A DNA stretch of 64,000 nt, from assembly GCF_046119375.1 (NCBI RefSeq), contig NW_027366100.1:1-64000 (forward strand), read 5' to 3'. The notes below the pieces were generated by a model. It worked only from the letters and a program-made list of their open reading frames with translations. It had not been told where the DNA came from and did not search any database. Of the stretch, positions 22,088-53,300 are shown piece by piece; position 1 is the first letter of the stretch; the number at the start of each line of letters is the position of its first letter. A program made the translations under genes and the position numbers. Source of the DNA: Phyllobates terribilis. Lineage: Eukaryota.

Positions 22088-22214
22088 GTCTTCTTCTTCG
22101 ATTTAGATCGGAAAATGTCTGTCTTCTTCGTTACTTTCCTGTGCTATTTGGTTTTGGGTGTTGTTGAGTGATTGAGAAATTAATTTGAGGGAGAAAGGAA
22201 AGGAAAGGACGGAG

Positions 22215-22345
22215 GTTTTTATATAACGGGCAAAAATAGATTCGTTTGTTACGGGAGTCAATGTGGTCCCCACTAGGGCTCCGTGTGTAAAGACTAAAGA
22301 GTGCGTGGCTGTTATGAGTTGTTTTTTCTTCTTTGACCAGTTTCA
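22215..22345 (-). promoter_or_regulatory. PP2C proximal promoter: TATA box and two W-boxes
   Basis: TATATAA at about 22219-22225, AGTCAA (TTGACT on minus) at about 22256, and TTGACC at about 22333. Confidence 0.45.
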
Positions 22346-22684
22346 ATTTCCCTGTATAGACTATTCCAATATTGCCCTTGCTTTTTGCTTCAGATACACT
22401 TGGTCTTATCTTAAGCCTATTCTGTCCGAACAAAACCACGTCGATACTTCGAATTTGTACATTAAATATCTCAGGAATTGCTTTTAAGTTTTTAACTCCT
22501 GATATCTTTTAAAAAAAACTCCTGATATCCCTTCAGTTTTTCTGATATAAGTCTTAAAGTATTACTTCTTTCGTTATATAATGTTGTTTGTTCCTATATT
22601 TTTAGAGTTTATTTATTGAGACATATTTTATATTTTAAATATTTTAAATATATATTATTAAAAATAATAAAATTTATATATAGT

Positions 22685-30077: not shown

Positions 30078-30180
30078 ATAGTTTAAAGTACTCGGCGAGA
30101 CGAATAAAACAATATGACTATGTTTTTTCATATATATTGAGAGAAATCGAGAAGATTCTCTATGAATGTGAATAGTGCAC

Positions 30181-30753
30181 GAACGGTATTGTTCGGGCGG
30201 ACTTATTTGTGTGAATTCGAATCATGCGGATGTCATGGTTATACGCGCAGGAAAGTAGCTGTGTTGCTGGGTAGCGGGATGCTGTTTTTTGCGGGCAGCT
30301 TGGAGCAGCAGGGATGGACGTCTTGAGAGTGGCGTGTTCGGGAAAGGCGATTTGTTCCTTCCTTCGTTCAAATTCTCGGGTTTACGACAAATCCGAAAAT
30401 TCGAGGGGCAAATTGTGGGAGCATAATTTATTCCTGAAGCTAGCTCATTAAATTAAATAGAATTAAATGTAATTAGAAAAGGCAAGGAGGGGCAATTTAG
30501 GAAAATATATGGTTAGGGTATTATTTAAAGACTCCCCTCCCTGCTCTTGGATTTACGCTTTTCTCAGTCTAAGAAATACAACAGTTCTTCCAGAAGCTCT
30601 TTTTCTCCATTAACAGGTGATCGAATGTTCCTTTATCTATTTCTCTTCATTCAATTTTATGTAACGACAATAGTTAAAGTACTCGGCGTATGTTTTTTCA
30701 TATATATTGAGAGAAATCGAGAAGATTCTCTATAAATGTGAATAGTGCACGAA
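30181..30753 (+). repeat. Tandem duplicate of the Retand 3' end, including a third LTR (30414-30669), the TSD and flank
   Basis: Near-identical to about 29596-30180. LTR2 and LTR3 differ at about 5 positions. Confidence 0.92.
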
Positions 30754-33171
30754 ATGAAATGGGAAGAAGATTATGGGACGGAGGGAGTAAGTAACTTAAA
30801 ACACTAAAAAGTAACTACTAATTAATTATTAAATTTATACTTTAAATTGTTTAATATGTGATTTTAGATACACATTAAAAAAATTGTATTTATATATTCC
30901 TAAAATTCCTTTTGAGTATATAATTTTTATAGATTTATGCTTATTTTGTTTTTTATTATTTGTGATTGTGGTTATAATTATCTTATGGTGGTTTTTTATG
31001 AAGTAATTTCAATAAAAAACTATATATATATATAATATTAAAGGAATATGGAAAAACAGTCTTAGAATCGTTTTTATCACATGTCGCTCTTAAAATAAAA
31101 GTTGAAATTTTTGCCAAGTGTCATTTTAGAGCTTTCTACTCATCAGTCACGTAGGACCCTGTAATCAATTTAATTTTCATTTTTTTCTTTAAATACTTCG
31201 TAAATGTGTAAAAGGAGAGTTAATGATTTTGAAATAATCTCTAAAATTGAAAAATTAAGATTTCTTTTAAAAAAAGAAATGTCTCAAAAAAACTTATAAT
31301 TTTTTAATCTTCCAAAAGAAGCATCCCTAAAACATCATTCATTTAAGTAATCATGAAAAATGAAATTTTGTTGATATTATTCTCAAAATTTTAAAAATTG
31401 AAGTTTAGTTTTTTCCAAATTAAAAAATCCAATTACACAAATTCGTAATAAATATGTTATATTTTTATTAGTATCTTTTATATATATTTAAAAACTATAA
31501 TATATTAATAATTATTTTTTAAATATAAAATTATGATAAATCGCGTGCATGAGCGCGATATAAACTAGTTTAAATTAAAACTGGTTTGTTAAAATTAAAA
31601 TTATTTTCTATTTCCGGTAGGAGGGAGTAGTAGCTTAATTAACGTATTAGAAATGCCCATAAATCGAGGAGTGTAAGGGACATAATGGTGAATTGAGGAA
31701 AGCAGTACCCTGGAAAGAAGGAAAGTCGGAGGGGATGCTTATTAATGAAGGGAAGTTTGGAATGGTCAAAGTGTCAAACACGTCATTAACGCTTCAGTGG
31801 TGAGAAGGGGTAAGTTACGTATTAGCCCTTGAATCGCGTAATGAAAGATAATAAAGGGAGTGGCTAACTGTCAGATTATAGTGTGGTTGCGGCGCCGCGT
31901 GATGACTGGTAGGATTTAAGTGAGGGAGGTTCGACGAAGTTACCGTTGCGAGGGTATATAATGTTTGTCGTCATCTGGGCCTCTACAGACCGTTGCTTCG
32001 CGGGCCCAATTCACATCATTTAAGCCCATCAGTCAGGGCATCAAATCACGTTTACATGAAGATACATAAACTACTTTTTTTTCTTAGGGTGTTTTTTAAC
32101 TATCCCTTATACACTTTTCGAACAAGTAATTATCTCCATACTTTAAGAAACTGATTATTTGACCCCCTTTATATCAAAATCCTAAAATTATCACCTATGT
32201 ACCACAATTTATTGTCATCGATAAATAGTTTTCCAAATTTTATTGTCATCAACCCAATTTATTGTCAGCAACACTAAAATTTATTGTCAGCAACAAATAA
32301 TTTTCTAAATTTTATTATCATCAACACAATTTATTGTCATCAACACTAAAATTTATTGTCAGCAACAAATAATCTTCCAAATTTTATTGTCATCAACACA
32401 ATTTATTGTCATAAACATTAAATTTTATTGTCAAAACAAATAATTTTCTAAATTTTATTGTCATCAATACAATTTATTGTTATAAACACACAAATTTATT
32501 GTCATCATCACTTAAATTTATTGTCACTAAGAAATGATTTTCAAAATTTTATTGTCATCAACACAACTTATTGTCACCATCACTAAAATTTATTGTCAGT
32601 AACAAATAATTTTCCAAATTTTATTGTCATCAACAATAAAATTTATTGTCAGCAACAAATAATTTTCTAAATTTTATTGTCATCAACACAATTTATTGTC
32701 ATCAACACTTAAATTTATTGTCAGCAACAAATGATTTTCCAAAATTTATTGTCATCAACACTAAAATTTATTGTCAGTAACAAATAATTTTCTAAATTTT
32801 ATTGTCATCAACATAAAATTTATTGCCAGCAAAAAATAATCTTCCAAATTTTATTGTCATCAACAAAATTTATTGTCATCAACACTTAAATTTTATTGTC
32901 AGCAACAAATAATTTTCCAAATTTTATTGTCATCAACACAATTTATTGTCATCAACACTAAAATTTATTGTCAAAAATAAATAATTTTCTAAATTTTGTT
33001 GTCATCAACACAATTTATTGACATCAACACTAAAATTTATTGTCAGCAACAAATAATCTTCCAAATTTTATTGTCATTAACACAATCGGCGTTTTTGCTA
33101 TATAGACCAGAAGCATAGATGAAACTAGGTAACTAACCTCCGTTTAGAAGTTTGCAAAACTAACCTCGTGA

Positions 33172-34195
33172 AGACACTTTCATGTGATGACACTTTCATG
33201 TGATGACAGTTTCATGTAATGACACTTTTTAGTGATGACACTTTTTCATGTGATGACACTTTTTCATGTGATGACACTTTCATGTGATGACACTTTTTAG
33301 TGATGACACTTTCATGTGATGACACTTTTTAGTGATGACACTTTTTAGTGATGACACTTTTTCATGTGATGACAGTTTCATGTGATGACACTTTTTTAGT
33401 GATGAGACTTTATTATGTGATGACGGTTTCTTTCATGTGATGACAGTTTCATGTGATAACACTTTTTAGTGATGACACTTTTTCATGTGATGACAGTTTC
33501 ATGTGATGAAACTTTTTAGTGATGGCAATTTTTCATGTGATGACACCTTCATGTGATGACAGTTTCATGTGATGACACTTTTTAGTGATGACATTTTTTC
33601 ATGTGATGACAGTTCCATGTGATGACACTTTCATGTGATGACACTTTTTAGTGATGACACTTTTTCAGTGATGACGCTTTTTGCAGTGATGACACTTTTT
33701 TACTATCATGTGATGACACTGTCATGTGATGACACTTTCAGGTGATGACAGTTTCATGTGATGACAATTTCATGTGATGACAGTTTTATGTGATGACAGT
33801 GTCACGTGATGACACTTTTTAATGATGACACTTTCAGATAATGACACTTTTTAGTGATGACACTTTCAAGTGATGACACTTTAATGTAATGACACTTTTT
33901 AGTGATGACAATGATAAGGTGATGACACTTTTTTAGTGATATTTTTAGTGATGAAGCTTTTGAAGCGATGACAATTTCTAAACATAAAAAGATTGTCATC
34001 AACCTTAAAAATAGAGTCATTAACCTTGAAAAAGTGTCATTAAACTTGAAAATAGTGTCATCAATCTTGAAAAAATTGTCATCAAATTTGAAAAAGTGTC
34101 ACCAAGCTTGAAAACATTGTCATCAACCTTGAAAATAGTGTCATCAATCTTTAAAAAATGTGATCAAGCTTATAAATAGTGTGATCAACCTTTAA
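33172..34195. repeat. Subterminal arrays of the Pack-MULE: GTGATGACAC 13-15-mers (33172-33965) and inverted GTCATCAACCTTGAAAA 17-mers (34010-34195)
   Basis: Visible directly in the sequence. Confidence 0.93.
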
Positions 34196-34326
34196 AAAGG
34201 TACAATTAATTACTTACGTCAAATTGCACTTTACAACTCTGCACCACCCCTATCCCGACTTTTCCTTTCATTTACTTGTTTCTTCATATCATCATGTATA
34301 TAAACTAGTAGCTACGCAAGACAAGG

Positions 34327-34832
34327 CTATGGTGTAGAATTTACAGAGATCTCATGAGACATTGAGCTTTGCTGGTCAGCACTGAAAGACTGGATCTTGA
34401 GATGCTGCAATGGCTTTAGAGCAACACAGAGTTGGGCGAATGAAGGACACAAGTTTGGGTCACTGTATAAGAAAGAGTTGAGAATATTAAAAGTGAAACA
34501 AAAGAAAACAAAGGTACAATTAATTACTTACGTCTGCCAGCATTCCCATATTATTCTTGCAACTAATGGATCAATCTCTTTAGGGATCTCAAGGCGTCGG
34601 TCCTGGAAACCAACTGCTCCAACAACTTGCATCGGATTCATTCCACTCCAAGGCTGCCTCAGGGTCGCCAGCTCCCATAATATTAATCCAAAGCTGTAGA
34701 TATCACATCTGACAGTACCCACAACTCATCACATTTTAATGCCACGCATAAAATCATTACAGTAATAAAATATTCAACTCACTTCTCATTGGATGGTTCA
34801 TTGCGAAGTATTTCAGGTGCCATCCACTCAGG
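34327..34832 (-). pseudogene. EDR1: Captured last three exons of an EDR1-like Raf MAPKKK (34832-34783, 34708-34532, 34462-34327)
   Basis: [52 protein letters not shown] and DPNLCPSFAQL...HEISVNSTP-stop, with GT-AG introns retained. Confidence 0.88.
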
Positions 34833-35371
34833 CTAATCAAATTATATACCAGATTAATGACAGCAACAATTTCATACTATCACAGTAACTCCCCCAATTT
34901 CATTCAATTGAAAATGATGACAACAACAATTTCATACTATGATAGTAACTCCCCTAACAAATTCAACTGAAAATCAGCAAACTCAGCTAACAAACTCAGC
35001 AAACTGAAAATCCTGCAAGCTCAACTATCAAATTCAACTAAAAATTCATCGAACTGAAAATTCCAAGCAGTTGAAATTCAGCTGAAAAAATTCCAAGCAA
35101 ACTCAGCTGAAAGAATTATTAACAAACTCAGCTGAAAAGTTTCCAAGCATTTGAAAATTCCAAGAAATCTCACTTGAAAAATTCAGCATAATACAAGGCA
35201 TGACAAACGTGTTCTTAACAGGAGATAATATGAGTTCAAGAGAACTTAGCATTGTGATGGGTTAATTATTTTCTCTTAGGGTTAAGAAATCTATCCATAG
35301 AATGTATCAACAACCTCTACCGAAACAAGAAATGAAATACTGGATGCAGTAGAAACTGAGTTGTAAGTTAC

Positions 35372-36250
35372 CTGCTCAGTCTTCTCCTCAACACCATCGG
35401 AGATGAATTTTTCAGTCTGCACTTAAATTAGACATCCTTGTTATGCACAATTACAAAAGCAGTAATCATTTCAGAAAAGAAATTGACTTGTAAGCATAGT
35501 ACCTCGGGAATAAGACCAAGACAGCCGGAGTAAAGAGCAAGTTGTTAGCTTTGATAGCCTGAGAATAAGGATCCAATGCAGTTGGTGCATTCTCAGTTTG
35601 AATAGCCTCTTTAATGCCTACGTTTCACACAGTTACAACAAATTTCATACTATCACAGTAACTCCCCCAATTTCATTCAATTGAAAATGATGACAGCAAC
35701 AATTTCATTCAATTGAAAACAATTAGAATAACTCATCCAATTTCATTTAGCAAATGCAGTTAAGCGAATGATCTTGCAATTTCAATCAATTGCAAGCGAT
35801 TATAGTAATAAAATGAAATGTGAGTCAAGAGAGAGACGATTGAGGAAGAAGGAACATAGGAAAAAGGGAAGCTAAATTACTAGGCTGAGCGGAGACGCTC
35901 ATGGAAGCGAAGGGGATGGATTTTCAACGAGAAGATGATTGCCAAAACTTGGAACCGACGAAGGAAACGCAGCCAACTCCAGTGAGAACAGGGCCCCTGG
36001 TTCTGACGGAGGCGTCGTCTAAAGCCGGAAAATTGAATGACGCCCTTGCTGCAGTCTATGCCATTGAGACTGTTCGTGCTATATACGGCTACGTCTCCGA
36101 CTCGTGCTATCTACGGCTTCGTCTCCGGCCGGTCGTCTTCGGCTCGTTGTCCTCTCAGCAGAACTCGATCGCCAAAACTTGGAAGCGCCGAAGGAAACAC
36201 AGCCAACTCCAGCGAGAATAGGGCCCCTGGTTCTGACGGAGGCGTCAGCA
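35372..36250 (-). pseudogene. RIDA: Captured exons 1-3 of plastid RidA (YjgF/YER057c/UK114); exon 1 ends 35881, exon 2 35617-35503, exon 3 35416-35372
   Basis: GVGCVSF...PFASMSVSA transit-peptide region, KEAIQTENAPTALDPYSQAIKANNL and TEKFISDGVEEKTEQ. One TGA in exon 1 and a 1-nt deletion in exon 2. A 77-bp part of exon 1 is duplicated (35941-36017 and 36171-36247). Confidence 0.88.
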
Positions 36251-39200
36251 GAGCTCGACCGCCGTCCTCGTTCGTTGTCTGGTGTCTTCAAGCGTGAAGG
36301 GGTGAAGAGTATGCCACTCATCAGCTCTGAGACCCACCGGAAGAAGAGATCGAAACCGTAAGCAACGAAGAGAGTGATGTGAAGCTTTGAAGCTTTCAGA
36401 GAAAGGAGGGAGTCCGTGGCAGGGGAGAAGGGAAGCAAGGGAAAATGAAGAAGAGAGAGAGCGTTTTCAGGATTAGGTTTTTTATATAAGGGTTAGTTTC
36501 TAAAATTAATAAAAATGGAGATTAGTTTGTTAAATAATATAGTAAAAAGAGTTAATTAATGATAATTTTTCTTAACACAATTTATTGTCATAAACATTAA
36601 AATTTATTGTCAGCAACAAATAATTTTCTAATTTTATTGTCATCAACACAATTTATTGTCATAAACACTAAAATTTATTATTAGCAACAAATAATTTTCT
36701 AAATTTTATTGTCAGCAACACAATTTATTGTCATCATTACTTAAATTTATTGTCATCAAGAAATGATTTTCAAAATTTTATTGTCATAAACACAATTTTT
36801 TGTCATCAACACTTAAATTTATTGTCAGCAATAAATAATTTTCTAAATTTTATTGTCATCAACACAACTTATTGTCATCATCTCTAAAATTTATTGTCAG
36901 CAACAAATAATTTTCCAAATTTTATTGTCATCAACACAACTTATTGTCACCAGCACTAAAATTTATTGTCAGCAACAAATAATTTTCCAAATTTTATTGT
37001 CATCAACAATAAAATTTATTGTCAGCAACAAATAATTTTCTAAATTTCATTTTCATCAACACTTAAATTTATTGTCACCAACAAATGATTTTCCAAATTT
37101 TATTGTCATCAACACTAAAATTTATTGTCAGCAACAAATAATTTTCTAAATTTTATTGTCATCAACACTAAAATTTATTGTCAGCGACAAATAATTTTCC
37201 AAATTTTATTATCATCAACACTAAAATTTATTGTCATCAAGAAATAATTTTCAAAATTTTATTGTCATAAATACAATTTATTGTCATCAACACTTAAATT
37301 TATTGTCAGCAAAAAAAAATCCAAATTTTATTGTCATCAACACAATTTATCTTCATCGACATTAAAATTTATTGTCAGCAACAAATAATATTTCAAATTT
37401 TATTGTCATCAACCTAACATTTATTGTCAGCAACAAATAAATTTCCAAATTTTATTGTCATCAACACAATTTATTGTCAGCAACACTAAAATTTATTGTC
37501 AGCAACAAATAATTTTCCAAATTTTATTGTCATCAACACAATTTATCTTCATCGACATTAAAATTTATTGTCAGCAACAAATAATATTTCAAATTTTATT
37601 GTCATCAACCTAACATTTATTGTCAGCAACAAAATAAATTTCCAAATTTTATTGTCATCAACACAATTTATTGTCAGCAACACTAAAATTTATTGTCAGC
37701 AACAAATAATTTTCCAAATTTTATTATCATCAACACAATTTATTGTCATCATCAATTAAATTTATTGTCATCAAGAAATGATTTTCAAAATTTTATTATC
37801 ATCAACACTAAAATTTATTGTCAGCAATAAATTATTTTTCAATTTTTTTATCATCATCACTAAAGTTATTGTCAGCAACAAATAATTTTTCAAATTTTGT
37901 TGTCATCAACATACTTTATTGTCAACACTAAAATTTATTGTTATCAACACAATTTATTGTCATCACTTAAATTTTTTGTCATCATTACTTAAATTTATTG
38001 TCATCAACACTTAACTTTGTTGTCATCAACATGAATGGTGCCAAAAACATTTAGAAATCGAGACATTTAGGTTATGTTATCTTCATCATATTTATTATGT
38101 CTTCAAAAACTCCAATGTGCAAACATCAAAAAAACACTTCTACACAAAATGTACCTCTAGAGAAGAAGTTGTAAACATCTTCAAAAATCTCCCTAGTAGC
38201 CAGGACATTAATAGGACCTGTAAACATCTTCAAAATCTCCCTGCAATAGCAGGCACACTAGATAAACATCCACATGTTCAATTTGCATCAGATCATCAGA
38301 AGTGGAGAGCATATAGTTTAAGACAACCCCCGAGATTTGCCTGGAAGAAAAGAAAAAACATCTCCATCAACAAGGATGCATCTAGATCTGCTCAATCATC
38401 TTCTAGCTACAAATAGTTGTTGTTATAAACAAAATTGAACAAAAACCTAACTAGCCATCGAATCAAAAGAATTGAGAGCGAAAAAATCATTCTCAGCAAG
38501 CTTAGGATGTAATAGCCTATCAATCACTGGTGAATCGATGGAGGAATTGAGCTTGCAGATCGAATCTTCGAGAGCGAGATGACGCTGGCGAGTCGATTGT
38601 TCATCTTTCGACGAATTTGCAGCGAAGGACGCAGCCGAAGGTACTCCCAGATTTGAGCTTGAGTTTACGAGATGATTTTGGCAGAACGGAAGCTTTCCCG
38701 GAAGCGGTGTCCCAGATAGGAGCTTCAAAAGGCATTCCTCTTATTTCCTTCATTCCTCATGTCGGAGGTACTCCACCATGGACGAGATCCACCACAGTCG
38801 ACACTGTCGGCGACAACGGTGATGGCCGAATCTCATTTGTATCCTCAGCGCACAGAGAGAGCGAGGGTTGGGGAGGGAGTAAGAGAGGGAGGAGAAAGAG
38901 CGAAGGTTTGGAGTTGCGTATCTCCGAGCTCATGTCTGGAGACGTGAATCCGACAATTTATGGCTTGCTTCCCACGGTTGTCGCCAAATCTAGGCACTCA
39001 AATTTCCGAACCGGTGACCATTGAATAGCTTAGAAATTGCTTCTGGAGCAGGAGAATCGGCTAGCCCTAAGTGGACAAGGTCTGAAAATGCTAGCGTGGT
39101 TGACTGGGTATCGAATTTGGCTCCCAAGCTCCGGTGAAGGTGAAAACAGGGGGTTGAGGTAGCGTCTCGTGTATGGGCTATGTCTTCTGCTTGTGATGGA

Positions 39201-39396
39201 GAATCGAAGATCGAGCGTGACAGAGAAGAGCTGGAGAAAATTGCATTTGTGTGATGGAGAAAGTGGCGAAGATCGTGCAGGATAGAGAACAACGTTTATT
39301 TATAGGGGTACAAAAATACAAATATCATAAAAAGAGGGTAAGTGATAAAAATAAAGTTTAAAAGTGGGCAATGGGCCCAAATTCTTCAATACAGAA

Positions 39397-39690
39397 ACAA
39401 GGCAAGCTCCTGAAATATGTCTACCTTACCAAAAAAGAGAATAGACTATTTGCCGAAACAAAGCCCAATAAACAGCAGCCCAAGAGGCCCAAAAGCCCCC
39501 GCTTACCAATTACGCACCCTTGATAGCCGAAAACTCCTTGCCGGAAGCGGGCAAAGCTGGAGATTTTGAAGGGTGTATCGCGAAGATTTCTGTTAGCTTG
39601 AGAGCGAGATTTGGGGCGGCAGATTCGTCGGAGATACTCCAATTTTCTCTCACCTCGCCCTATAAATAATCTCTCTCAAGAATCTTCAAG
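39397..39690 (+). promoter_or_regulatory. NRPB9 promoter
   Basis: Site-II-like AGCCCA/GGCCCA motifs at 39460-39495 and TATAAAT at 39661. Confidence 0.6.
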
Positions 39691-40477
39691 ATGAGTACGA
39701 TGAAGTTCTGCCGTGAATGGTTAACTCCCCACTGAACTCTCAGTTGTTGAATAAAACCGATTTCAGTGTCTTCTACTTCCTTTTTAACTCAAATTCTTTG
39801 ATAATCGTTAATAAACATTCGTTTCATCGTCAATTTTGCTCTGATGCGTTTTGATTATTGCTACAGCAACAACATTCTGTACCCAAAGGAGGATAGGGAC
39901 CAAAAAATCCTCCTTTATGCTTGCCGTAACTGCGATCACCAGGTCTTTCTTTCACTCTCCACTCTATGATTGTCCAATTGATGACTTAATGTTCAAATTG
40001 CCCTGGTGTGGTAAATTTGTATTCAGTTTGGCTTCCTGTGATCCTCCAGGCTCTTATCGAAAGAGCAATTGTGTAATTTGCAATTCTGTATTGAATGTCT
40101 TTTACCGGATTTGGATTGCATGTTATGCCTGAACAAACTACATGTCTCTTATTCCTCTTTTGGTTATACAGGAGGTTGCTGATAACAACTGTGTGTACAG
40201 AAACGAGATTCATCATTCAGCTGGGGAGAGGACTCAAGTCCTCCAGGATGTAGCTGCTGATCCAACTTTACCTCGTACCAAAGCTGTTCGCTGTGCTCAA
40301 TGCAGTCATGGAGAAGCTGTTTTTTTCCAGGTACTGTTTGATTCTGATCACTGCTGCTTGAGATTTCGCTCAATCACTCTGGTTTATTATTTACAGGCTC
40401 CATCAAGAGGGGAAGAAGGTATGACACTGTTCTTCGTTTGTTGCAACCCCAACTGCGGCCACCGCTGGAGAGATTAG
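39691..40477 (+). CDS. NRPB9: RNA polymerase II/IV/V subunit 9, 114 aa; exons 39691-39719, 39867-39942, 40172-40330, 40397-40477
   Basis: [19 protein letters not shown]...[10 protein letters not shown]...ADPTLPRT...RCAQC...EAVFFQ...[18 protein letters not shown], with two Zn ribbons and in-phase GT-AG introns. Confidence 0.97.
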
Positions 40478-40674
40478 TTCATGTAACTTCGTTCGTTAAA
40501 GTGCTGTGAAATTGTGTAATTCGAAATCTGGGTTCTTTTTTGGGACTATTTCTAATCCAGACATTGATGAGAAGTAGAAGTAAACAAAATCCGAAACTGT
40601 GATGCTTTTCAACATTCTGGTTTATGCATCTTATTTAGTCACAAACACAAAGTTCAGTAGTAAGACTTTTGTCA

Positions 40675-40990
40675 TTAAACACCGCCGCTGCTCATATTCC
40701 AAAACTTAACTTCATGCTCAAGAACACTCAACAACGCCACCTCAGCTTTGGCTCGAGCATCATCTGAAGCCTTCAGAAGACAGCGGTTTGCAATACTCTG
40801 AAGAGTATTACAGTACTGAGCAAAGCCCTCATTTCCCCATCTCTCACACGTTGCTTTAAGCTCTGTTGGTGTACTTGAGTCATCTTCAAGACAGTGAGCG
40901 AAACTTTGTTGATAGACTGCCACAATTGCCCAGAATGCTGTGATGGCCGCTGCGTACTCGGTTTCAGGTTGCATCAAACTCTCAAGAAAT
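40675..40990 (-). pseudogene. TENA_E: TENA_E (TenA/THI-4 thiamine-salvage hydrolase) last exon only
   Basis: Acceptor TTGCAG, then RFLESLM...TAFWAIVAVYQQSFAHCLED...RWGNEGFAQYC...HEVKFWNMS. No exon 1 was found in the window. Confidence 0.8.
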
Positions 40991-41270
40991 CTGCAACGGA
41001 GTTGAAATTGCTTAGAAATGATACAATAGAAGATTTTGGATTGCATAATATGGTAGAGTCAGTTGAGTCTCCGTTTGGTATACTTTTCCGGTAACGAAAA
41101 CGGAAAGGAAACGAATCTAGACAATTTTACGTTAGCTGTTCATTCATCGAGATAGTTTTGCAACTTGTGACTCCCTTCGTCAAGGTATTGTGGAAACAAA
41201 TACCCTCGGCAAGTCGTAAGACCATCTTGTTAGTTCCGAGAATCAAATTTGAATAACAATTTAAACAAGA

Positions 41271-42315
41271 TGTATGAGCAGGATCAACAGGTCCTCGACG
41301 AGCAGCGTGGAAAGATACTCGACGAGTAAGACCTACGCAGGATAGGCCGGATCAACGTAGACAGGTCCTCGACGAGCAGGACCTACACAGGATGAGCCGG
41401 ATCGGCGTAGACTGATCCTCGACGAGCAGCTTAGGGAGATACTCGACGAGTAGACAGTCCGTCCAAGAGCCTATCTGATCTTCGTATCTCTTTGGCCGTC
41501 GAGATAATTTCGTATATCTCGAATGATCATCCACAAAAGTAATGTAGTACTTCTTTCCACCTCTAGATTCGGTGTTCCTAAATTCTGCTAGGTCTGAATG
41601 GATCAATTCCAACGGTTCAGTTGTCCTTTCATTGACAGAATTAAAAGCCTTTCTCTTAAATTTGGCCTCTACACATACATTACACTTTTTATGATCATAT
41701 TTAGTCAAGTTCGAAATTAATCCCATTGCATGCATTCGATTAATGGATTTAACATTCACATGTCCTAATCTAGCATGCCATAAATTCAAATATTCAACGA
41801 TATAAGCAGAAGAACCAATTTCATTGACAACAACAACATCAATTTCAAGGAAATACAATAAGTTGTTCCTATATGCCTTTCCTAGGAAAACACCATTCTT
41901 ACTTAAAACTATTTTCCCGCATTCAGTTACTTGCTTAATTCCAGCAATCTCAAGCAAAGCACCAGATACTCGACGAGCAGACAGTCCACATCATCCGGCT
42001 TGTTAACCTGACCCCTTAATATATTTGTTATAACTCGACCCGTTCTGACCCGAAAAAATTTGACCTGAAATGACCGATCCGAAATAACCCGAACCCGCAA
42101 CTATGTAACCCGAACCCGACCCGACCGACCCATTACTACGTCTACTTGAATAGGTGGGTTTTCGGATCGGATTGACGGGATGGGATAATCTGGCTCACTC
42201 CCAAAACACCTTCAACGTGGCCTTTTTATTTAAGTGAAAATTGTTACTACAGACATATACTGTGACAGAAGTCACAAGAGTAAAAAGAGCACATTTCACC
42301 CAAAATAAGGAGAGA
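41271..42315 (-). mobile_element. Segment X, copy 1: TAR-like Copia pre-integrase/integrase fragment between CTCGACGAG repeats, a hAT-MITE end and about 170 bp of unique DNA
   Basis: LWHARLGHVN, CNVCVEAK, LIHSDL and YITFVDDHSRY. ACCCGAACCCGACCCG repeats end at about 42145. Confidence 0.8.
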
Positions 42316-42810
42316 AATACAGAAACAAGGCAAGCTCCTGAAATATGTCTACCTTACCAAAAAAGAGAATAGACTATTTGCCGAAACAAAGCCCAATAAA
42401 CAGCAGCCCAAGAGGCCCAAAAGCCCCCGCTTACCAATTACGCACCCTTGATAGCCGAAAACTCCTTGCCGGAAGCGGGCAAAGCTGGAGATTTTGAAGG
42501 TGTATCGCGAAGATTTCTGTTAGCTTGAGAGCGAGATTTGGGGCGGCAGATTCGTCGGAGATACTCCAATTTTCTCTCACCTCGCCCTATAAATAATCTC
42601 TCTCAAGAATCTTCAAGATGAGTACGATGAAGTTCTGCCGTGAATGGTTAACTCCCCACTGAACTCTCAGTTGTTGAATAAAACCGATTTCAGTGTCTTC
42701 TACTTCCTTTTTAACTCAAATTCTTTGATAATCGTTAATAAACATTCGTTTCATCGTCAATTTTGCTCTGATGCGTTTTGATTATTGCTACAGCAACAAC
42801 ATTCTGTACC
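42316..42810 (+). pseudogene. NRPB9: Duplicated NRPB9 promoter, exon 1 (ATG 42618), intron 1 and start of exon 2
   Basis: Identical to 39388-39890 except for one 1-bp indel by eye. It breaks off after NNILY. Confidence 0.95.
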
Positions 42811-43841
42811 TCGACGAGCAGCGTGGAAAGATACTCGACGAGTAAGACCTACGCAGGATAGGCCGAATCAACGTAGACAGGTCCTCGACGAGCAGGACCT
42901 ACACAGGATGAGCCGGATCGGCGTAGACTGATCCTCGACGAGCAGCTTAGGGAGATACTCGACGAGCAGACAGTCCGTCCCAGAGCCTATCTGATCTTCG
43001 TATCTCTTTGGCCGTCGAGATAATTTCGTATATCTCGAATGATCATCCACAAAAGTAATGTAGTACTTCTTTCCACCTCTAGATTCGGTGTTCCTAAATT
43101 CTGCTAGGTCTGAATGGATCAATTCCAACGGTTCAGTTGTCCTTTCATTGACAGAATTAAAAGCCTTTCTCTTAAATTTGGCCTCTACACATACATTACA
43201 CTTTTTATGATCATATTTAGTCAAGTTCGAAATTAATCCCATTGCATGCATTCGATTAATGGATTTAACATTCACATGTCCTAATCTAGCATGCCATAAA
43301 TCCAAAGATTCAACGATATAAGCAGAAGAACCAATTTCATTGCCAACAACAACATCAGTTTCAAGGAAATACAATAAGTTGTTCCTATATGCCTTTCCTA
43401 GGAAAACACCATTCTTACTTAAAACTATTTTCCCGCATTCAGTTACTTGCTTAATTCCAGCAATCTCAAGCAAAGCACCAGATACTCGACGAGTAGACAG
43501 TCCACATCATCCGGCTTGTTAACCTGACCCCTTAATATATTTGTTATAACTCGACCCGTTCTGACCCGAAAGAATTTGACCTGAAATGACCGATCCGAAA
43601 TAACCCGAACCCGCAACTATGTAACCCGAACCCGACCCGACCGACCCGATTACTACGTCTACTTGAATTGGTGGGTTTTCGGATCGGATTGACGGGATGG
43701 GATAATCTGGCTCACTCCCAAAACACCTTCAACGTGGCCTTTTTATTTAAGTGAAAATTGTTACTACAGACATATACTGTGACAGAACTCACAAGAGTAA
43801 AAAGAGCACATTTCACCCAAAATAAGGAGAGAAATACAGAA
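42809..43841 (-). repeat. Segment X, copy 2
   Basis: About 12 differences from 41293-42324 by eye. Confidence 0.92.
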
Positions 43842-46031
43842 GGGTGTTTTTTTTAACTACCCCTTTTCTACACTTCCAACAACCAATTACCTCCCTAATT
43901 TCAGAAACTAATTATTTGACTCCCTTTCTATCAAAACCCTAAAATTATCACCTATCTACCACAATTTATTGTCATCAACACTCAAATTTATTGTCAGCAA
44001 CACATAATTTTCCAAATTTTATTGTCACCAACACAATTTATTGTCATCAACACTTAAATTTATTGTCAGCAACACATAAACATTCCAAATTTTATTGTCA
44101 TCAACACAATTTATTATCATCAACACTCAAATTTATTGTCAACAACACATAATTTTTCAAATTTTATTGTCATCAACACAATTTATTGTCATCAACATTT
44201 AAATTTATTGTCAGCCACACATAATTTTCCAAATTTTATTGTCACCAACACCAACACAATTTATTGTCATCAACACTTGTCAGCAACACATAATTTCCAA
44301 TTTTATTGTCACCAACACAATTTATTGTCATCAACACTCAAATTTATTGTCAACAACACATAATTTTCCAAATTTTATTGTCACCAAACCAATTTATTGT
44401 CATCAACACTTAAATTTATTGTCAGCAACACATAACATTCCAAATTTTATTGTCATCAACACAATTTATTATCATCAACACTCAAATTTATTGTCAACAA
44501 CACTTAATATTCCAATTTTTATTGTCATCAACACAATTTATTGTCAGCAACACATAATTTTCCAAATTTTATTGTCACCAACACAATTTATTGTCATCAA
44601 CACTCAAATTTAATCTTTGGTTTCAGTTACTCGTTAGCCATTTTAGCAAAATCAGCTTTTGACATCTATCATAGACACTCGACGAGCAGTAGACACTCGA
44701 CGAGTAGTGGGTTAAAAACTTAGGGTTTATCTCTGACGAGCAGATAAGATACTCGACGAGTAGTAGACACTCGACGAGCAGTAGACACTTGACGAGTAGT
44801 GGGTTAAAACTTAGGGTTTATCTCGACGAGCAGTGAAGATACTCGACGAGTAGTAGACACTCGACGAGCAGTAGACACTCGACGAGTAGTGGGTTTATCT
44901 CGACGAGCAGTGAAGACACTCGACGAGTAGTAGACACTCGAGGATCAGTAGATACTCAACGAGTAGAGCGGAAGACAATGGTAGTGGGTTTAGGGTTTAA
45001 CTCGACGAGCAGAGAGGACACTCGACGAGCAGAGAGGACAATCGACGAGCAGTAGACACTCGACGAGCAGCAGACACTCGACGAGCAGTAGATATTCGAC
45101 GAGTAGAGCGGAAGACAATGGTAGTGGGTTTAGGGTTTAACTCGACGAGCAGAGAGGACACTCGACGAGCTGTAGACAATGTAAGGCTGATACAGGTCCG
45201 AGGTCTGTATCGATTGGCTCTGATACCATGAAAAGAGAAGATGGAAATGTAATTGTGTGTGTTTATTCATGGAGGAGACCTCAATACATACAAGTTATAC
45301 AAGTGTGAATGAGATATCTTCCTAGAAGATATCTCATTCAAAAAAATCCAAATTTTATTGTCAGCAACTTAAATTTATTGTCAGCAAAAAAAATCCAAAT
45401 TTATTGTCATCAACATAATTTATCTTCATCAACATTAAAATTTTATTGTCAGCAACAAATAATATTTCAAATTTTATTGTCATCAACCTAACATTTATTA
45501 TCAGCAACAATTAAATTTCCAAATTTTATTGTCATCAACACAATTTATTGTCAACAACACTAAAATTTATTGTCAGCAACAAATAATTTTCCAAATTTTA
45601 TTGTTATCAACACAATTTATTTTCATCATCACTTAATTTATTGTCATCAAGAAATGATTTTCAAAATTTTATTATCATCAACACTAAAATTTATTGTCAG
45701 CAATAAATAATTTTTTCAAATTTTGTTATCATTATCACTAAAATTTATTGTCAGCAATAAATATTTTTTAATTTTTGTTGTCATCAACACACTTTATTGT
45801 CAACACTAAAATTTATTGTTATAAACACAATTTATTGTCATCACTTAAATTTATTGTCATTATTACTTAAATTTATTGTCATCAACACTATAACTTTATT
45901 GTTATCAACATGAATGGTGCCAAAAACATTTAGAAATCGAGACATTTAGGTTGTGTTATCTTCATCATATTTATTATGTCTTCAAAACTCCACTGTGCAA
46001 ACATCAAAAAACACTTCTACACAAAATGTAC
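43842..46031. mobile_element. Second, truncated and composite copy of the array-bearing MULE
   Basis: The left end is about 80% similar to 32087. Arrays lie at 43960-44610 and 45340-45910. The segment 45340-46031 closely matches 37300-38150. Confidence 0.8.
44611..45340 (-). mobile_element. Copia 5' fragment: partial LTR, Met-PBS and a repeat-rich 5' UTR
   Basis: GGCTCTGATACCA at about 45217-45229 followed by TGAAAAG. 18-bp GACACTCGACGAGCAGTA repeats with embedded TTTAGGG. Confidence 0.7.
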
Positions 46032-46962
46032 GGGGTTTAAACTTGGCAGGTCACTAAACTATCCCACAGTTCATTTCGATCACCAAACTAAAAAACGATA
46101 CGAAGTGATCACTGAACTATCAACATTCAACTTCCGACGATATTTTTTTATTTCCGACTCAGAATTGCCCATGTGGCTCCCGGGAAGATGACTCACACCA
46201 CAAATCACTTGCCACGTCATTAAATCACTTGTTTTTAATTTTAAAAAAATGTTTATTTTTGTAACCTTGCCAGGTCATCCTCTTCTCTGACACCGCTCGT
46301 CGAGGGCCTTACACTGCTTGTCGAGGGCCTTACACTGCTCGTCGAGGTCCTCTCACTGCTCGTCGAGGTCCTCTCACTGCTCGTAGGACTATTTACACCG
46401 CTCGTCGAGGGCCTTACACTGCTCGTCGAGGGCCTTACACTGCTCGTCGAGGTCCTCTCACTGCTCGTCGAGGTCCTCTCACTGCTCGTAGGACTATTTA
46501 CACCGCTCGTCGAGGGCCTTACACTGCTCGTCGAGGTCCTCTCACTGCTCGTCGAGGGTCTCACACCGATCCTGCACGTAGGACTATCTACACCGCTCGT
46601 CGAGGGCCTTACACTGCTCGTCGAGGGCCTTAAACAACAAGAAGAGGGTGGGTGCGAAGAGGGTAGTGTCGCAAGAGAAGTTCAATTCACAGAAGGTGTC
46701 AGAGAAGAGGGTGACCTGGCAAGGTTAAAAAAAATAAACATTTTTTTAAAATTAAAAACAAGTGATTTAATGACGTGGCAAGTGATTTGTGGGTGTGAGT
46801 CATCTTCCCCGGAGCCCACATGGGCAATTCTGAGTCGGAAATAAAAAAATATCGTCGGAAGTTGAATGTTGATAGTTCAGTGATCACTTCGTATCGTTTT
46901 TTAGTTTGGTGATCGAAATGAAACTGTGGGATAGTTGAGTGACCTACCAAGTTTAAAACCCC
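46032..46962. mobile_element. Foldback MULE/MITE, copy 1 (no TSD)
   Basis: About 250-bp TIRs starting GGGGTTTAAACTTGGCAGG. Internal 21-bp CTCGTCGAG repeats occur in one orientation only. Confidence 0.85.
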
Positions 46963-50316: not shown

Positions 50317-53300
50317 TGATAAGGCCCGAAATAGTTTTATTTTAATAGATATTAAGATTAAGATGATCTTGTAGCCCAGATAAAAGATATTGTAAGGATA
50401 TAGTATCCTAACAATATCAATTAAATCAATAATATGTCTCTAATTATATTATTTCCCTAATACTCACGTTCAAGTTGTAGCATTAGATACTGGAATTGCT
50501 GCTTTCCTCGTGTCTTGGTGAAAAGATCAAATGGTTGCTCAGAACTCACAATGTGAGAAGTAGAACCGTCCCGCCTCTATGATGTCATGAATGAAGTGCA
50601 AATCAATCTCTATATGCTTCGTACACTCACGAACGATTGGCTTCGCTGCAATATAAATGGGGTTTAAACTTGGCAGGTCACTAAACTATCCCACAGTTTC
50701 ATTTCGATCACCAAACTAAAAAACGATACGAAGTGATCACTGAACTATCAACATTCAACTTCCGACGATATTTTTTTTATTTCCGACTCAGAATTGCCCA
50801 TGTGGCTCCCGGGAAGATGACTCACACCCACAAATCACTTGCCACGTCATTAAATCACTTGTTTTTAATTTTTAAAAAATGTTTATTTTTTTTAACCTTG
50901 CCAGGTCATCCTCTTCTCTGACACCGCTCGTCGAGGGCCTTACACTGCTCGTCGAGGGCCTTACACTGCTCGTCGAGGTCCTCTCACTGCTCGTCGAGGT
51001 CCTCTCACTGCTCGTAGGACTATTTACACCGCTCGTCGAGGCCTTACACTGCTCGTCGAGGGCCTTACACTGCTCGTCGAGGGCCTTAAACAACAAGAAG
51101 AGGGTGGGTGCGAAGAGGGTAGTGTCGCAGGAGAAGTGTAAGGCCCTCGACGAGCAGTGTAAGGCCCTCGACGAGCAGTGTAAGGCCCTCGACGAGCGGT
51201 GTAGATAGTCCTACGAGCAGTGAGAGGACCTCGACGAGCAGTGAGAGGACCTCGACGAGCAGTGTAAGGCCCTCGACGAGCAGTGTAAGGCCCTCGACGA
51301 GCGGTGTCAGAGAAGAGGGTGACCTGGCAAGGTTAAAAAAAATAAACATTTTTTTAAAACTAAAAACAAGTGATTTAATGACGTGGCAAGTGATTTGTGG
51401 GTGTGAGTCATCTTCCCCGGAGCCACATGGGCAATTCTGAGTCGGAAATAAAAAAAATATCGTCGGAAGTTGAATGTTGATAGTTCAGTGATCACTTCGT
51501 ATCGTTTTTTAGTTTGGTGATCGAAATGAAACTGTGGGATAGTTGAGTGACCTACCAAGTTTAAAACCCCAATATAAATAGTTCCCTGACTGTCACAAAA
51601 CAGTCGCATTGGAGATGCTAAGACCACGCCTAAAGAACGGAGGAGAGACCGGATCCAGAGAATCTCGTTACATGTTGTTGCCATCAAGCGATACTCTGCC
51701 TCTATCGATGAACGAGAGACGGTAATCTGCTTCTTCTTCTTCCAAGAGACCGGAGACGAACCAAGCATGATGAAATAGCCAGTCACATACCGACGAGTAA
51801 TAGGACAGGAAGCCGAATGAACGCGGAAATTGTGAGGGAACTAGTAATGGAAAATAAAAGACCTTGACTCGGTTGAGCCTTAATGTAATTTAATACACAA
51901 ACAGTTGCAACCTAGTGTGCTTCTGTCGGAAGCTGCATGAACTACGCAAGTGTATGAATCTAGTAGCATACCTTCGATCTAGTGATGGTGATATAAATAA
52001 GGCGCCCGATGAGATGTAACAATTTGGCTCAGCGGACGACGGATTGTCAACCGTAGCCAAAGAGTGATTCTACTCCATGGGAAGTGTAGCCGGATTTGTA
52101 CCTAGAAGACCGACCTCTGATAGAATATATAACACATGCTTGCGTTGAAGATAGATTCGCAGCATTACGAGCAATCTCAATGCTGAGAAAGTGCCTTAAT
52201 GAGTATCAATGGATCCTTTCATAGGAAAGTACAAGCTTAAGTAACGCCTTAAAGAGGAGATTGCAGCAGAATCATTACCTCAATGATTAGATCATCGGCG
52301 TACACCAGAACCTGAAGCATATCTGTCGCAAGTTGCATAGTAATGAATAGTCAGTGTAACTTGCTAAAATCAGAACGTGCAAATTGCAGTAGCTAATTTA
52401 GAGAACCAGTTCCGTGGAGCTGCCACAGACCATAAAAGAGACTTCCGAAGGCGGCATACCTGGCTGGGTCCGACACCAAGCAAACCAGGCGGAGCTTTCA
52501 TATACACTTCTTCATCTAGATAGCAGTGAAGAAATGCATTATGGACGTCCATTTGATGGAGTTCATACTCCTTAGTCGTTGCCAATGATAGGAAAAGAAG
52601 CACCATTGTCATCTTGACAATATGAGAGAAAGATCATGTGTAATTTGTCCCTTCTACTTGACGATTGTCAGAACAAAGAGACGAGCTTTGTAACCGTTCG
52701 ACCGACTCGTTTGCTTTACACTTGACTGTGATATAACCATTTTCAACCGATTGGTCGTTTTGCTTGACAATAGAGATGAGAGAGTCCAGGCTGTTGTTAC
52801 GAGCAAGTGCATCGAGTTCGGCTTTCATAGATGCTCGCCAATTATCATATTGAACACCTCGTAATATGATGAAGGCTCGACATGAGACTGAATAGCTGCA
52901 ATGAAAGCCACATGTCTATTCGAAAATTATGTAACTGATACAACTGAGTCAATACTATAATGGTGTACATGCAGTGTGGGACTTGGTCGTGAGTGAGCGT
53001 GATGTAGGAGAGGGTATCAATGACAGTAGATGAGCCACAGTGATAACTAGTAAGCCTAATATTCGGTGTACGAATACGATGTAGGTAGGGAGGCGACGCG
53101 GTCGATTATCCCAAAACAGGAGGCAAGTCAGCAACTGGAGAAGGAAAAGAAACAGGATCAGCGACAGGCACGGGAAGAGCGGGGGTGAGTTACTCCCCGT
53201 GTCTATAGAGATGGCTGAAGAGACCTCGTTGTAACCATAGACAACTGGTAAGGCAGGAGAAGATAGAGACGGTGACTCCGTAAATGGTGTAGCCAAGAAC

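What the first reader, a model, noticed from the sequence alone, without database searches (positions are those of the whole stretch)
39380..43860. Filled and empty sites of one MULE insertion side by side at NRPB9
AATACAGAA occurs three times: after a MULE right end and before the promoter (39388), once alone between segment X and the promoter (42316, empty site), and between X and a MULE left end (43833). The order is MULE-promoter-NRPB9-TENA_E / X-promoter-NRPB9 fragment / X-MULE. This implies serial template switching, alternative transposition with precise excision, or two alleles joined. The promoter copies differ by about 1 in 495 bp but the X copies by about 12 in 1030 bp.
Basis: partly seen in the sequence, partly recalled or inferred. 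Interest (0 to 1): 0.7.

Follow-up and report, generated by a model that had tools for sequence, protein, structure and literature searches.

The report
Transposon-flanked local duplication at NRPB9
Next to an intact RNA-polymerase subunit gene (NRPB9) in a plant genome, a 2.9-kb block lying between two Mutator-type transposon ends is present one and a half times, and all three block edges carry the same 9-letter word; it is a neat but ordinary kind of transposon-associated rearrangement, and its exact origin cannot be settled from this sequence alone.

Summary
AATACAGAA lies on the + strand at 39388, 42316 and 43833. The promoter copies (496 bp) differ by one indel. The X copies (1033 bp) differ by 11 substitutions and one indel. 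The two repeat pairs overlap by exactly these 9 bp.

X's left edge (41293) is not a break in copy 1, because a 50-bp repeat array runs across it. So there is one 2,928-bp unit [9-mer, promoter, NRPB9, TENA_E exon 3, X] present 1.5 times. Copy 2 lacks 1,409 bp, at a junction with a 2-bp overlap (CC).

The 9-mer abuts a clear MULE left terminus at 43842. It also abuts a weakly supported right terminus at about 39387 (p about 0.01-0.08). The two MULE pieces cannot be shown to be one element.

- **Best reading (about 0.4):** the 9-mer is a Mutator target-site duplication, and the middle "empty site" was re-formed secondarily by joining two of its copies.
- **Rivals:** alternative transposition, template switching on a chance 9-mer, parallel same-site insertions into an older array, and assembly error.

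No reads or outside DNA of this species could be obtained. The kind of event is known; interest is moderate to low.

The parts
36575..39387 (+). Left-truncated MULE piece ('a2'): a 72-bp-period TTTATTGTCATCAAC array (36575-38031) followed by 1.36 kb of unique DNA. It ends ...AAATTCTTC directly before the 9-mer.
   Evidence: 37470-38154 is 93.8% identical to 45354-46031. Its unique 121 bp differ by 2 substitutions; the array part differs by 4.6%. A TIR-like anchored match to the family's left ends is best within +-10 bp of 39387 (p 0.013 and 0.08). No Pfam domain was found in its ORFs.
39388..39396 (+). 9-mer AATACAGAA, copy 1 (start of unit 1)
   Evidence: sequence
39397..39883 (+). P1: NRPB9 promoter region, exon 1, intron 1 and the first 17 bp of exon 2
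   Evidence: Together with the 9-mer it is identical to 42316-42810 except for one G-run indel. GGCCCA / AGCCCA motifs lie at 39462-39500 and the ATG at 39692.
39692..40477 (+). NRPB9 gene: four exons (39692-39720, 39868-39942, 40172-40330, 40397-40477), reading frame open
   Evidence: Exon translations. Pfam Zn_ribbon_TFIIS, 5.8e-10. 99 of 104 residues of exons 2-4 are identical to the best plant NRPB9 hit. Exons were compared one by one and never joined.
40678..41001 (-). TENA_E last exon only, followed by about 270 bp of its intron 2 up to about 41273. Exons 1 and 2 are absent from the whole window.
   Evidence: Pfam TENA_THI-4 profile positions 104-208 of 210, 2.3e-16. tblastn with seven full-length TENA_E proteins finds only residues about 107-219. 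The acceptor site is read. The Beta vulgaris gene has 3 exons within 2 kb.
41293..42315 (+). X1: a CTCGACGAG-type 50-bp array, a copia gag-pre-integrase / integrase fragment (41352-41957, - strand), and 330 bp of unique DNA. The array starts at or before 41274, so 41293 is not a break in this copy.
   Evidence: Pfam gag_pre-integrs 7.4e-14. 41274-41328 aligns to 41392-41452. TRF reports the array at 41306-41429.
42316..42324 (+). 9-mer, copy 2: the 'empty site' junction X1|9-mer|P2, shared by both repeat pairs
42325..42810 (+). P2: a second promoter plus a 5' gene fragment, cut 17 bp into exon 2
42809..42810 (+). The only non-homologous junction (P2|X2), with a 2-bp overlap CC. Compared with unit 1 it removes 1,409 bp (39884-41292).
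   Evidence: BLAST ends overlap by 2 bp. Sequence read.
42811..43832 (+). X2: the second copy of X
   Evidence: 11 substitutions and 1 indel against X1, spread from 41350 to 42271
43833..43841 (+). 9-mer, copy 3, directly before the MULE left terminus
43842..46031 (+). MULE piece 'b'. It holds a left terminus GGGTGTTTTTTTTAACTACCCC, an array (43960-44612), an LTR-retrotransposon fragment (44613-45346), more array, and 120 bp of unique DNA. It is cut off at 46031 by a small MULE.
   Evidence: Its left end is 83% identical to the left end at 32087-32203. Repeat structure. No inverted partner of the left end exists in the window.

Best explanation
**What it is.** A real, local, transposon-associated duplication in two layers.

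1. Inferred: a Mutator-like element once inserted about 300 bp upstream of the NRPB9 start codon, between X and the promoter, and made the 9-bp target-site duplication AATACAGAA.
2. Inferred: an older duplication of that filled site followed. Its outer breakpoint was in TENA_E intron 2. It left a right MULE end, then [9-mer, promoter, NRPB9, TENA_E exon 3, X, 9-mer], then a left MULE end, with the two ends facing the segment from outside. Later deletions removed the outer halves. The right-end piece now has no left end, and the left-end piece is cut off at a small MULE with unmatched flanks.
3. Shown as structure, inferred as mechanism: the 2,928-bp segment between the two 9-mers was then duplicated head to tail, with the join falling exactly in the 9-mer. 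The join could come from single-strand annealing or end joining of two 9-mer-ended flanks after cuts at the MULE termini, or from slippage between the two 9-mers. Either way it re-creates the sequence X|9-mer|promoter, which looks like a never-filled site.
4. Shown: copy 2 lacks 1,409 bp (the rest of NRPB9 plus the TENA_E exon) at a junction with a 2-bp overlap. That loss happened either in the same event, as a second template switch, or later.

**Result.** One intact NRPB9 gene, plus a second promoter and 5' fragment pointing into X2 and the transposon.
For: - Three 9-mers lie exactly at the edges of the two repeat pairs, which overlap by 9 bp and mismatch immediately outside. This is the r-S-r-S-r pattern of a tandem duplication between short direct repeats.
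- Nine bp is the usual Mutator TSD length (8-11 bp, PMC6446971). Two other MULEs in the window have perfect 9-bp TSDs: TTTTTCTTA for 32087-36565 and AATATAAAT for 50659-51570.
- The third 9-mer abuts a terminus (GGGTG...) that is shared by two elements.
- A TIR-like match puts a right terminus within +-10 bp of 39387 (p 0.013 and 0.08). The subterminal ACCCC..TATA motif sits at the same offset as in the other ends.
- The 50-bp array crosses 41293 in copy 1, so only one non-homologous junction exists.
- TENA_E is cut in intron 2 and abuts transposon-derived DNA, as expected at an older duplication breakpoint.
- The two MULE pieces are close relatives: 1.7% substitutions in 121 unique bp and 4.6% in the array. 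That is at least as old as the X pair (1.07%), which fits the proposed order of events.
- Both MULE pieces are visibly truncated. The small MULE at 46032-46962 has unmatched flanks, AAAATGTAC and TTATCCTCC.
Against: - The right terminus at 39387 is only weakly supported. It shows no significant local TIR, and its last 48 bp are no more like the other right end than chance (p = 0.43).
- A GGCCCAAAT promoter-type motif sits 5-15 bp before the first 9-mer, so this DNA might be native promoter rather than transposon.
- The expected outer copies (X plus 9-mer left of the first MULE piece; 9-mer plus promoter right of the second) are not in the window. Two extra deletions must therefore be assumed.
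- The left array of piece b (43960-44612) is only about 81% like piece a2's array.
- If units 1 and 2 arose together, P (0 of 495 substitutions) and X (11 of 1032) should be equally diverged. The difference has p = 0.013-0.02 and needs gene conversion or unequal mutation rates to explain it.
- No reads, other accessions or related genomes could be examined.
Confidence: 0.4

Rival explanations
1. Alternative transposition. The right end of one MULE and the left end of a different nearby MULE (reversed ends) were cut together. The segment between them was released and circularised, and the two ends re-inserted into it at the site X|promoter. This gives one 9-bp TSD with the two ends facing the permuted segment. 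Replication running round that segment, then aborting and being rejoined by end joining (the 2-bp CC junction), gives the extra half unit in the same event.
For: - One TSD-length repeat sits next to ends of two MULE pieces that are not demonstrably one element.
- Both pieces lack their own partner ends.
- The TENA_E intron abuts unrelated transposon-derived DNA near 41273, which could be the ligation joint of the circle.
- In maize Ac/Ds, reversed-ends transposition releases the inter-transposon segment as a circle and yields TSD-marked tandem duplications (PMC3744419). Re-replication there gives duplicated flanks joined at 0-4 bp of microhomology (PMC4270019).
Against: - The published Ac products put the transposon at the duplication junction, or the ends facing inward in a composite insertion. 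The outward arrangement with an intact target copy between the ends is my extrapolation and is not described in those papers.
- No such events are documented for MULEs in what I read.
- The partner TSDs that would prove two separate original insertions are lost.
- A single event predicts equal age for the P and X pairs, which is not what is seen.
Confidence: 0.17
2. The 9-mer upstream of NRPB9 is not a TSD but a chance match. MULE piece b inserted after X. A break or stalled fork at its left terminus then left a 3' end ...AATACAGAA. That end annealed to the same 9-mer 2.9 kb upstream, copied 487 bp of promoter and gene start, and switched again (CC) to the start of X. It then copied X and the 9-mer and rejoined the MULE. 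This is a templated 1,517-bp insertion made by two template switches.
For: - One event explains everything between 42325 and 43841.
- X follows TENA_E without a break.
- A GGCCCAAAT promoter-type motif lies just before the first 9-mer, and evidence for a terminus at 39387 is weak.
- Template switching at transposon ends with short microhomology is well documented (1-36 bp, median 2 bp, PMC8277862).
Against: - The same 9-mer within 4.4 kb on the same strand is expected with probability of only about 0.04.
- The match length equals the Mutator TSD length.
- A MULE-like right end lying within about 10 bp of that 9-mer would be a second coincidence.
- A single event again predicts equal P and X divergence.
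Confidence: 0.12
3. The tandem array [X, 9-mer, promoter...] existed first and the middle site was never filled. Two different MULE copies later inserted independently at the same 9-bp target in the first and third paralogous promoter copies. Deletions then removed their outer halves.
For: - The middle site is a perfect single-copy target.
- The array parts of the two MULE pieces are more diverged (4.6%) than X (1.07%).
- Mutator elements favour promoter-proximal sites (PMC6446971 notes their propensity to insert in or near genes).
Against: - It needs two independent hits on the identical 9 bp.
- It also needs the same two later deletions as the best explanation, so it has more steps.
- In the 121 unique bp the two MULE pieces differ by only 1.7%, which is compatible with paralogy.
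Confidence: 0.06
4. Assembly artefact. Two haplotypes (one with the MULE, one without), or a chimeric read, were stitched into one contig, so the 1.5-unit structure does not exist on any one chromosome.
For: - X1 and X2 differ by about 1.1%, a level typical of allelic divergence in an outcrossing plant, while the P copies are identical.
Against: - Haplotype stitching joins homologous sequence. The P2|X2 junction joins exon 2 of NRPB9 to a retrotransposon-type array with only 2 bp in common.
- The order (right half-site, empty site, left half-site) is not what placing a filled and an empty allele in tandem would give.
- There are no N runs in the window.
Confidence: 0.1

Closest known systems
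Tandem duplication between short direct repeats (microhomology-mediated duplication, replication slippage, or unequal exchange)
   Same: Head-to-tail copies with the same short repeat at the start, at the junction and at the end. A second junction has 2 bp of microhomology.
   Different: Here both outer copies of the repeat sit exactly at transposon termini, and the repeat has the length of that transposon's TSD. This suggests that the breaks were made at the transposon ends. Copy 2 is also internally deleted.
Reversed-ends / sister-chromatid alternative transposition of maize Ac/Ds, including re-replication 'composite insertions' (PMC3744419, PMC4270019)
   Same: Termini of two separate nearby elements carry one target-site duplication. 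Flanking segments are duplicated and joined at 0-4 bp of microhomology. An intact copy of the target site persists beside a half-filled one.
   Different: - The superfamily differs: Mutator with a 9-bp TSD rather than hAT with 8 bp.
- Both half-sites and the intact site lie on one chromosome, with the ends facing the segment from outside. That arrangement is not among the products described in those papers.
- No reciprocal product or pedigree is available.
Ordinary MULE or Pack-MULE insertion with 9-bp TSD (for example 32087-36565 and 50659-51570 in this window)
   Same: The terminus is GGG..., the flanking repeat is 9 bp, and the insertion lies close to a gene's promoter.
   Different: The two ends next to the 9-mer face away from each other and belong to two truncated pieces. 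No single element lies between two TSD copies.
Gap-repair or FoSTeS-type sequence capture at TIR transposons (PMC8277862)
   Same: Nearby sequence is copied next to a transposon end, with microhomology at the switch points.
   Different: The copied DNA lies outside the element, next to its terminus, not between its TIRs. One of the two overlaps is 9 bp, against a reported median of 2 bp.

Membership tests
Mutator-like element insertion (filled site) | A direct repeat of 8-11 bp immediately outside both termini | tested here: inconclusive
   The 9-mer abuts the left terminus at 43842 exactly. On the other side the terminus can only be placed within +-10 bp of 39387.
Mutator-like element insertion (filled site) | The two termini belong to one element and are related as inverted repeats | tested here: inconclusive
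   Local TIR search is no better than chance. Anchored alignment gives p 0.013 and 0.08. The two pieces overlap in content and are both truncated.
Mutator-like element insertion (filled site) | Transposase (MURA / DDE) or clear kinship with an autonomous element | tested here: not met
   No transposase domain was found in the ORFs of 34397-39292 that were searched. Assignment to Mutator rests on the 9-bp TSDs and termini of neighbouring elements.
Tandem duplication between short direct repeats | Head-to-tail copies with the same short repeat at the start, junction and end | tested here: met
   Unit 39388-42315 is followed by 42316-43832. The 9-mer lies at 39388, 42316 and 43833. Copy 2 carries a 1,409-bp internal deletion.
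Alternative transposition product (reversed ends / sister chromatid) | One TSD shared by termini of two different elements | tested here: inconclusive
   The pieces cannot be shown to be one element or two. Divergence is 1.7% in the unique part and 4.6% in the array part.
Alternative transposition product (reversed ends / sister chromatid) | A reciprocal product or a progenitor allele exists | not testable with these tools
   No reads, accessions or related genomes of this species could be reached.
Haplotype-stitching assembly artefact | Joins fall within homologous sequence; depth is halved across the duplicated parts | tested here: not met
   The P2|X2 join is between non-homologous DNA with a 2-bp overlap. 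Depth could not be tested.

The most novel reading that the evidence does not exclude
This may be a natural footprint of alternative transposition in the Mutator superfamily. Under this reading, reversed ends of two neighbouring MULEs were cut together and re-inserted into the excised inter-transposon circle. That permuted the NRPB9 / TENA_E segment, and aborted re-replication added the extra half unit. It would show, in a wild genome, that the Ac/Ds-type mechanism also reshapes genes through MULEs.
Probability: 0.15. Interest if true: 0.6.

Novelty: new member of a known kind. Interest (0 to 1): 0.33.

Why it matters
If the structure is real, it is a compact natural example of transposon ends acting as breakpoints for local gene duplication. 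It also shows that a sequence looking exactly like a never-filled insertion site can be made secondarily, by joining two copies of a target-site duplication. That is a caution for methods that date or polarise insertions from 'empty sites' found in paralogous copies.

The event also created a second NRPB9 promoter and 5' fragment aimed into transposon DNA, and it left TENA_E as a lone last exon here. It does not open a new class of mechanism.

Tried and rejected
**Steps that gave nothing**
- Exact-protein look-ups found nothing for the TENA_E exon ORF or for the two 201-aa X ORFs.
- Two metagenome scans, one with the 9-mer plus promoter start and one with NRPB9 exon 4, found nothing.
- The scan's own notes, searched by sequence and by words, gave nothing.

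**Readings I rejected or weakened**
- The genome is not from Brassicaceae. The TENA_E exon is closest, at about 70-75%, to Caryophyllales proteins. In Beta vulgaris, NRPB9 is not within 10 kb of TENA_E.
- I rejected a single upstream MULE spanning 32087-39387. Its left end pairs with the right end at about 36565 (TIR-like score 17, above all 400 control windows) and has a perfect TSD TTTTTCTTA. Its left end and array are only 80-83% like piece b, while 37470-38154 is 94-98% like it.
- A competing nested-element reading (33087-36570, TSD TAACACAAT) cannot be fully excluded.
- I considered a right terminus at about 39357, from a short motif match. Anchored alignment does not favour it.
- CpG decay does not explain the X differences: 6 are transitions and 5 transversions, and only one lies at a CpG.


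Full report
**1. The observation**

AATACAGAA occurs four times in the window. Three copies are on the + strand, at 39388, 42316 and 43833. One is on the - strand at 40084, inside an NRPB9 intron. About 1.25 copies are expected by chance.

Self-comparison gives two clean direct repeat pairs:
- 39388-39883 against 42316-42810: 496 bp, no substitution, one indel in a G run.
- 41293-42324 against 42809-43841: 1033 bp, 11 substitutions, one indel.

In the middle copy the two pairs overlap by exactly the 9-mer. The bases just outside it differ on both sides. The window has no N.

**2. The genes**

NRPB9 is intact, with four exons at 39692-40477, an open frame and a TFIIS-type zinc ribbon. Exons 2-4 match the best plant NRPB9 hit at 99 of 104 residues. 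I compared exons one by one and did not join them.

TENA_E (- strand) is present only as its last exon, 40678-41001, with its acceptor site and about 270 bp of intron 2. Seven full-length TENA_E proteins find nothing else in the 64 kb. In Beta vulgaris the gene has three exons within 2 kb, and NRPB9 is not within 10 kb.

The closest TENA_E proteins are from Caryophyllales, at about 70-75%. The genome is therefore not from Brassicaceae, and I could not name the species.

**3. Segment X**

X consists of a 50-bp-period array of CTCGACGAG-type units, a copia gag-pre-integrase and integrase fragment on the - strand (41352-41957), one more array unit, and 330 bp of unique DNA.

In copy 1 the array begins at or before 41274, and 41274-41328 aligns to 41392-41452. 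The 'start of X' at 41293 is therefore not a discontinuity in copy 1. It is a breakpoint only in copy 2.

- the 9-mer junction X1|promoter 2;
- one non-homologous junction, promoter fragment|X2 at 42809/42810, with a 2-bp overlap (CC).

Formally, one 2,928-bp unit [9-mer, promoter, NRPB9, TENA_E exon 3, X] is present 1.5 times, and copy 2 lacks 1,409 bp. A short repeat at the start, junction and end is the standard signature of a tandem duplication between short direct repeats.

**4. The transposon pieces**

The upstream 'MULE' is two elements.
- **32087-36565** has the left terminus GGGTGTTTTTT... and a right end that pairs with it. The anchored TIR-like score is 17, above all 400 control windows. 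It has a perfect 9-bp TSD, TTTTTCTTA, at 32078 and 36566. It carries the RidA / EDR1 fragments noted earlier by the scan.
- **36575-39387 (a2)** has no left end.

Downstream, piece b starts at 43842 with the same kind of left terminus (83% identity over 115 bp). It is cut off at 46031 by a 931-bp MULE whose flanks do not match.

a2 and b share about 685 bp (37470-38154 against 45354-46031) at 93.8% identity. That breaks down as 4.6% substitutions in the array part and 1.7% (2 of 121) in the unique part.

Is 39387 a right terminus?
- Local TIR searches are no better than chance.
- The last 48 bp are no more like the other right end than chance (p = 0.43).
- An alignment anchored at the terminus is best within +-10 bp of 39387 (p = 0.013 against one left end and 0.08 against the other).
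- A subterminal ACCCC..TATA motif lies at the same offset as in the three other ends.

That is weak but real support. Against it, a GGCCCAAAT promoter-type motif lies 5-15 bp before the 9-mer.

**5. Weighing the readings**

A 9-bp repeat lying exactly outside a MULE left terminus, and within error outside a MULE-like right terminus, is what a Mutator TSD looks like (8-11 bp, PMC6446971). Two other elements in the window have perfect 9-bp TSDs.

A chance 9-mer within 4.4 kb on the same strand has probability about 0.04. It would additionally have to lie next to a MULE-like end. I therefore favour the TSD reading overall, at about 0.6-0.65 summed over its three variants.

The two ends face the segment from outside, so the history needs more than one insertion. 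The variants are:
- **(a) Two-step duplication.** The most ordinary path is an older tandem duplication of a filled site with one breakpoint in TENA_E intron 2. It is followed by loss of the outer halves; both truncations are visible. A second duplication of the inter-MULE segment then joined two TSD copies and re-created an empty-looking site.
- **(b) Alternative transposition.** Reversed ends of two MULEs re-insert into the excised inter-transposon circle, possibly with re-replication. This is modelled on maize Ac/Ds (PMC3744419, PMC4270019). The exact outward arrangement seen here is my extrapolation, not a product those papers describe.
- **(c) Parallel insertions.** Two independent same-site insertions into an older array.

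Outside the TSD reading, a two-switch templated insertion primed on a chance 9-mer remains possible. Template switching with microhomology of 1-36 bp (median 2 bp) is reported in PMC8277862.

An assembler stitching two alleles is unlikely, because the 42809/10 junction joins non-homologous DNA. It could not be tested.

**6. The divergence contrast**

X has 11 substitutions in 1032 sites (about 0.4-0.8 million years at commonly used plant rates). P has 0 in 495 (95% upper bound 0.6%). The contrast has p = 0.013-0.02.

It is suggestive, not decisive. It could reflect gene conversion within the 496-bp homology block, different mutation rates, or different ages. The X differences are not mainly CpG transitions.

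**7. What could not be done**

Exact-protein look-ups and two metagenome scans found no other DNA of this species. The choice among mechanisms therefore rests on the window alone.

**8. Verdict**

It is a transposon-flanked 1.5-copy local duplication. The 'empty site' is more likely a secondary join of two TSD copies than an ancestral site or a precise excision.

This is a new example of known kinds of event. Interest is moderate to low unless population or pedigree data show alternative transposition by a MULE.

Noticed in passing
32078-36574: Pack-MULE boundaries. The left terminus at 32087 and the right end at 36565 are flanked by a perfect 9-bp TTTTTCTTA and pair as degenerate inverted repeats of about 100 bp. 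The two readings are not fully resolved.
   Followed up: partly
46032-46962 and 50659-51570: Two copies, 97-98% alike, of a roughly 920-bp non-autonomous MULE. They have long inverted ends (GGGGTTTAAAC...) full of 21-bp CTCGACGAG-type repeats. The second copy has a perfect 9-bp TSD, AATATAAAT. The first has unmatched flanks (AAAATGTAC and TTATCCTCC), which marks another breakpoint: a deletion or a recombination between copies.
   Followed up: partly
44613-45346: A fragment of an LTR retrotransposon on the - strand, sitting inside the MULE's repeat array. It holds the last 118 bp of an LTR ending ...TTTTCA, a tRNA-iMet primer-binding site TGGTATCAGAGCC (45216-45228), and a leader made of 18-bp CTCGACGAG repeats. 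It is not a simple insertion, because the MULE array to its left is only about 81% like the relative's array.
   Followed up: partly
41437-41460 / 41963-41986 and 42953-42976 / 43479-43502: The copia fragment in X is bracketed by a 24-bp direct repeat, AGATACTCGACGAG[T/C]AGACAGTCC. X1 has T in the first repeat and C in the second. X2 has C and then T, a reciprocal swap that hints at exchange between these short repeats.
   Followed up: no
40678-41273: TENA_E is reduced to its last exon plus part of intron 2. Exons 1 and 2 are nowhere in the 64 kb, so this copy is a pseudogene fragment unless the rest lies more than 23 kb away.
   Followed up: yes
31190-31232 and 31796-31828: Two more inverted matches to the MULE left-terminal motif (AACT.CCCTT..ACAC) lie upstream of the Pack-MULE. 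They may be remnants of further right ends.
   Followed up: no
29596-30753: A tandem duplication of about 580 bp at 92% identity. It lies next to a gypsy-type retrotransposon (25162-29065: protease, reverse transcriptase, RNase H, integrase). A copia element lies at 14644-17916 and PP2C phosphatase exons at 21105-22439 on the - strand.
   Followed up: no
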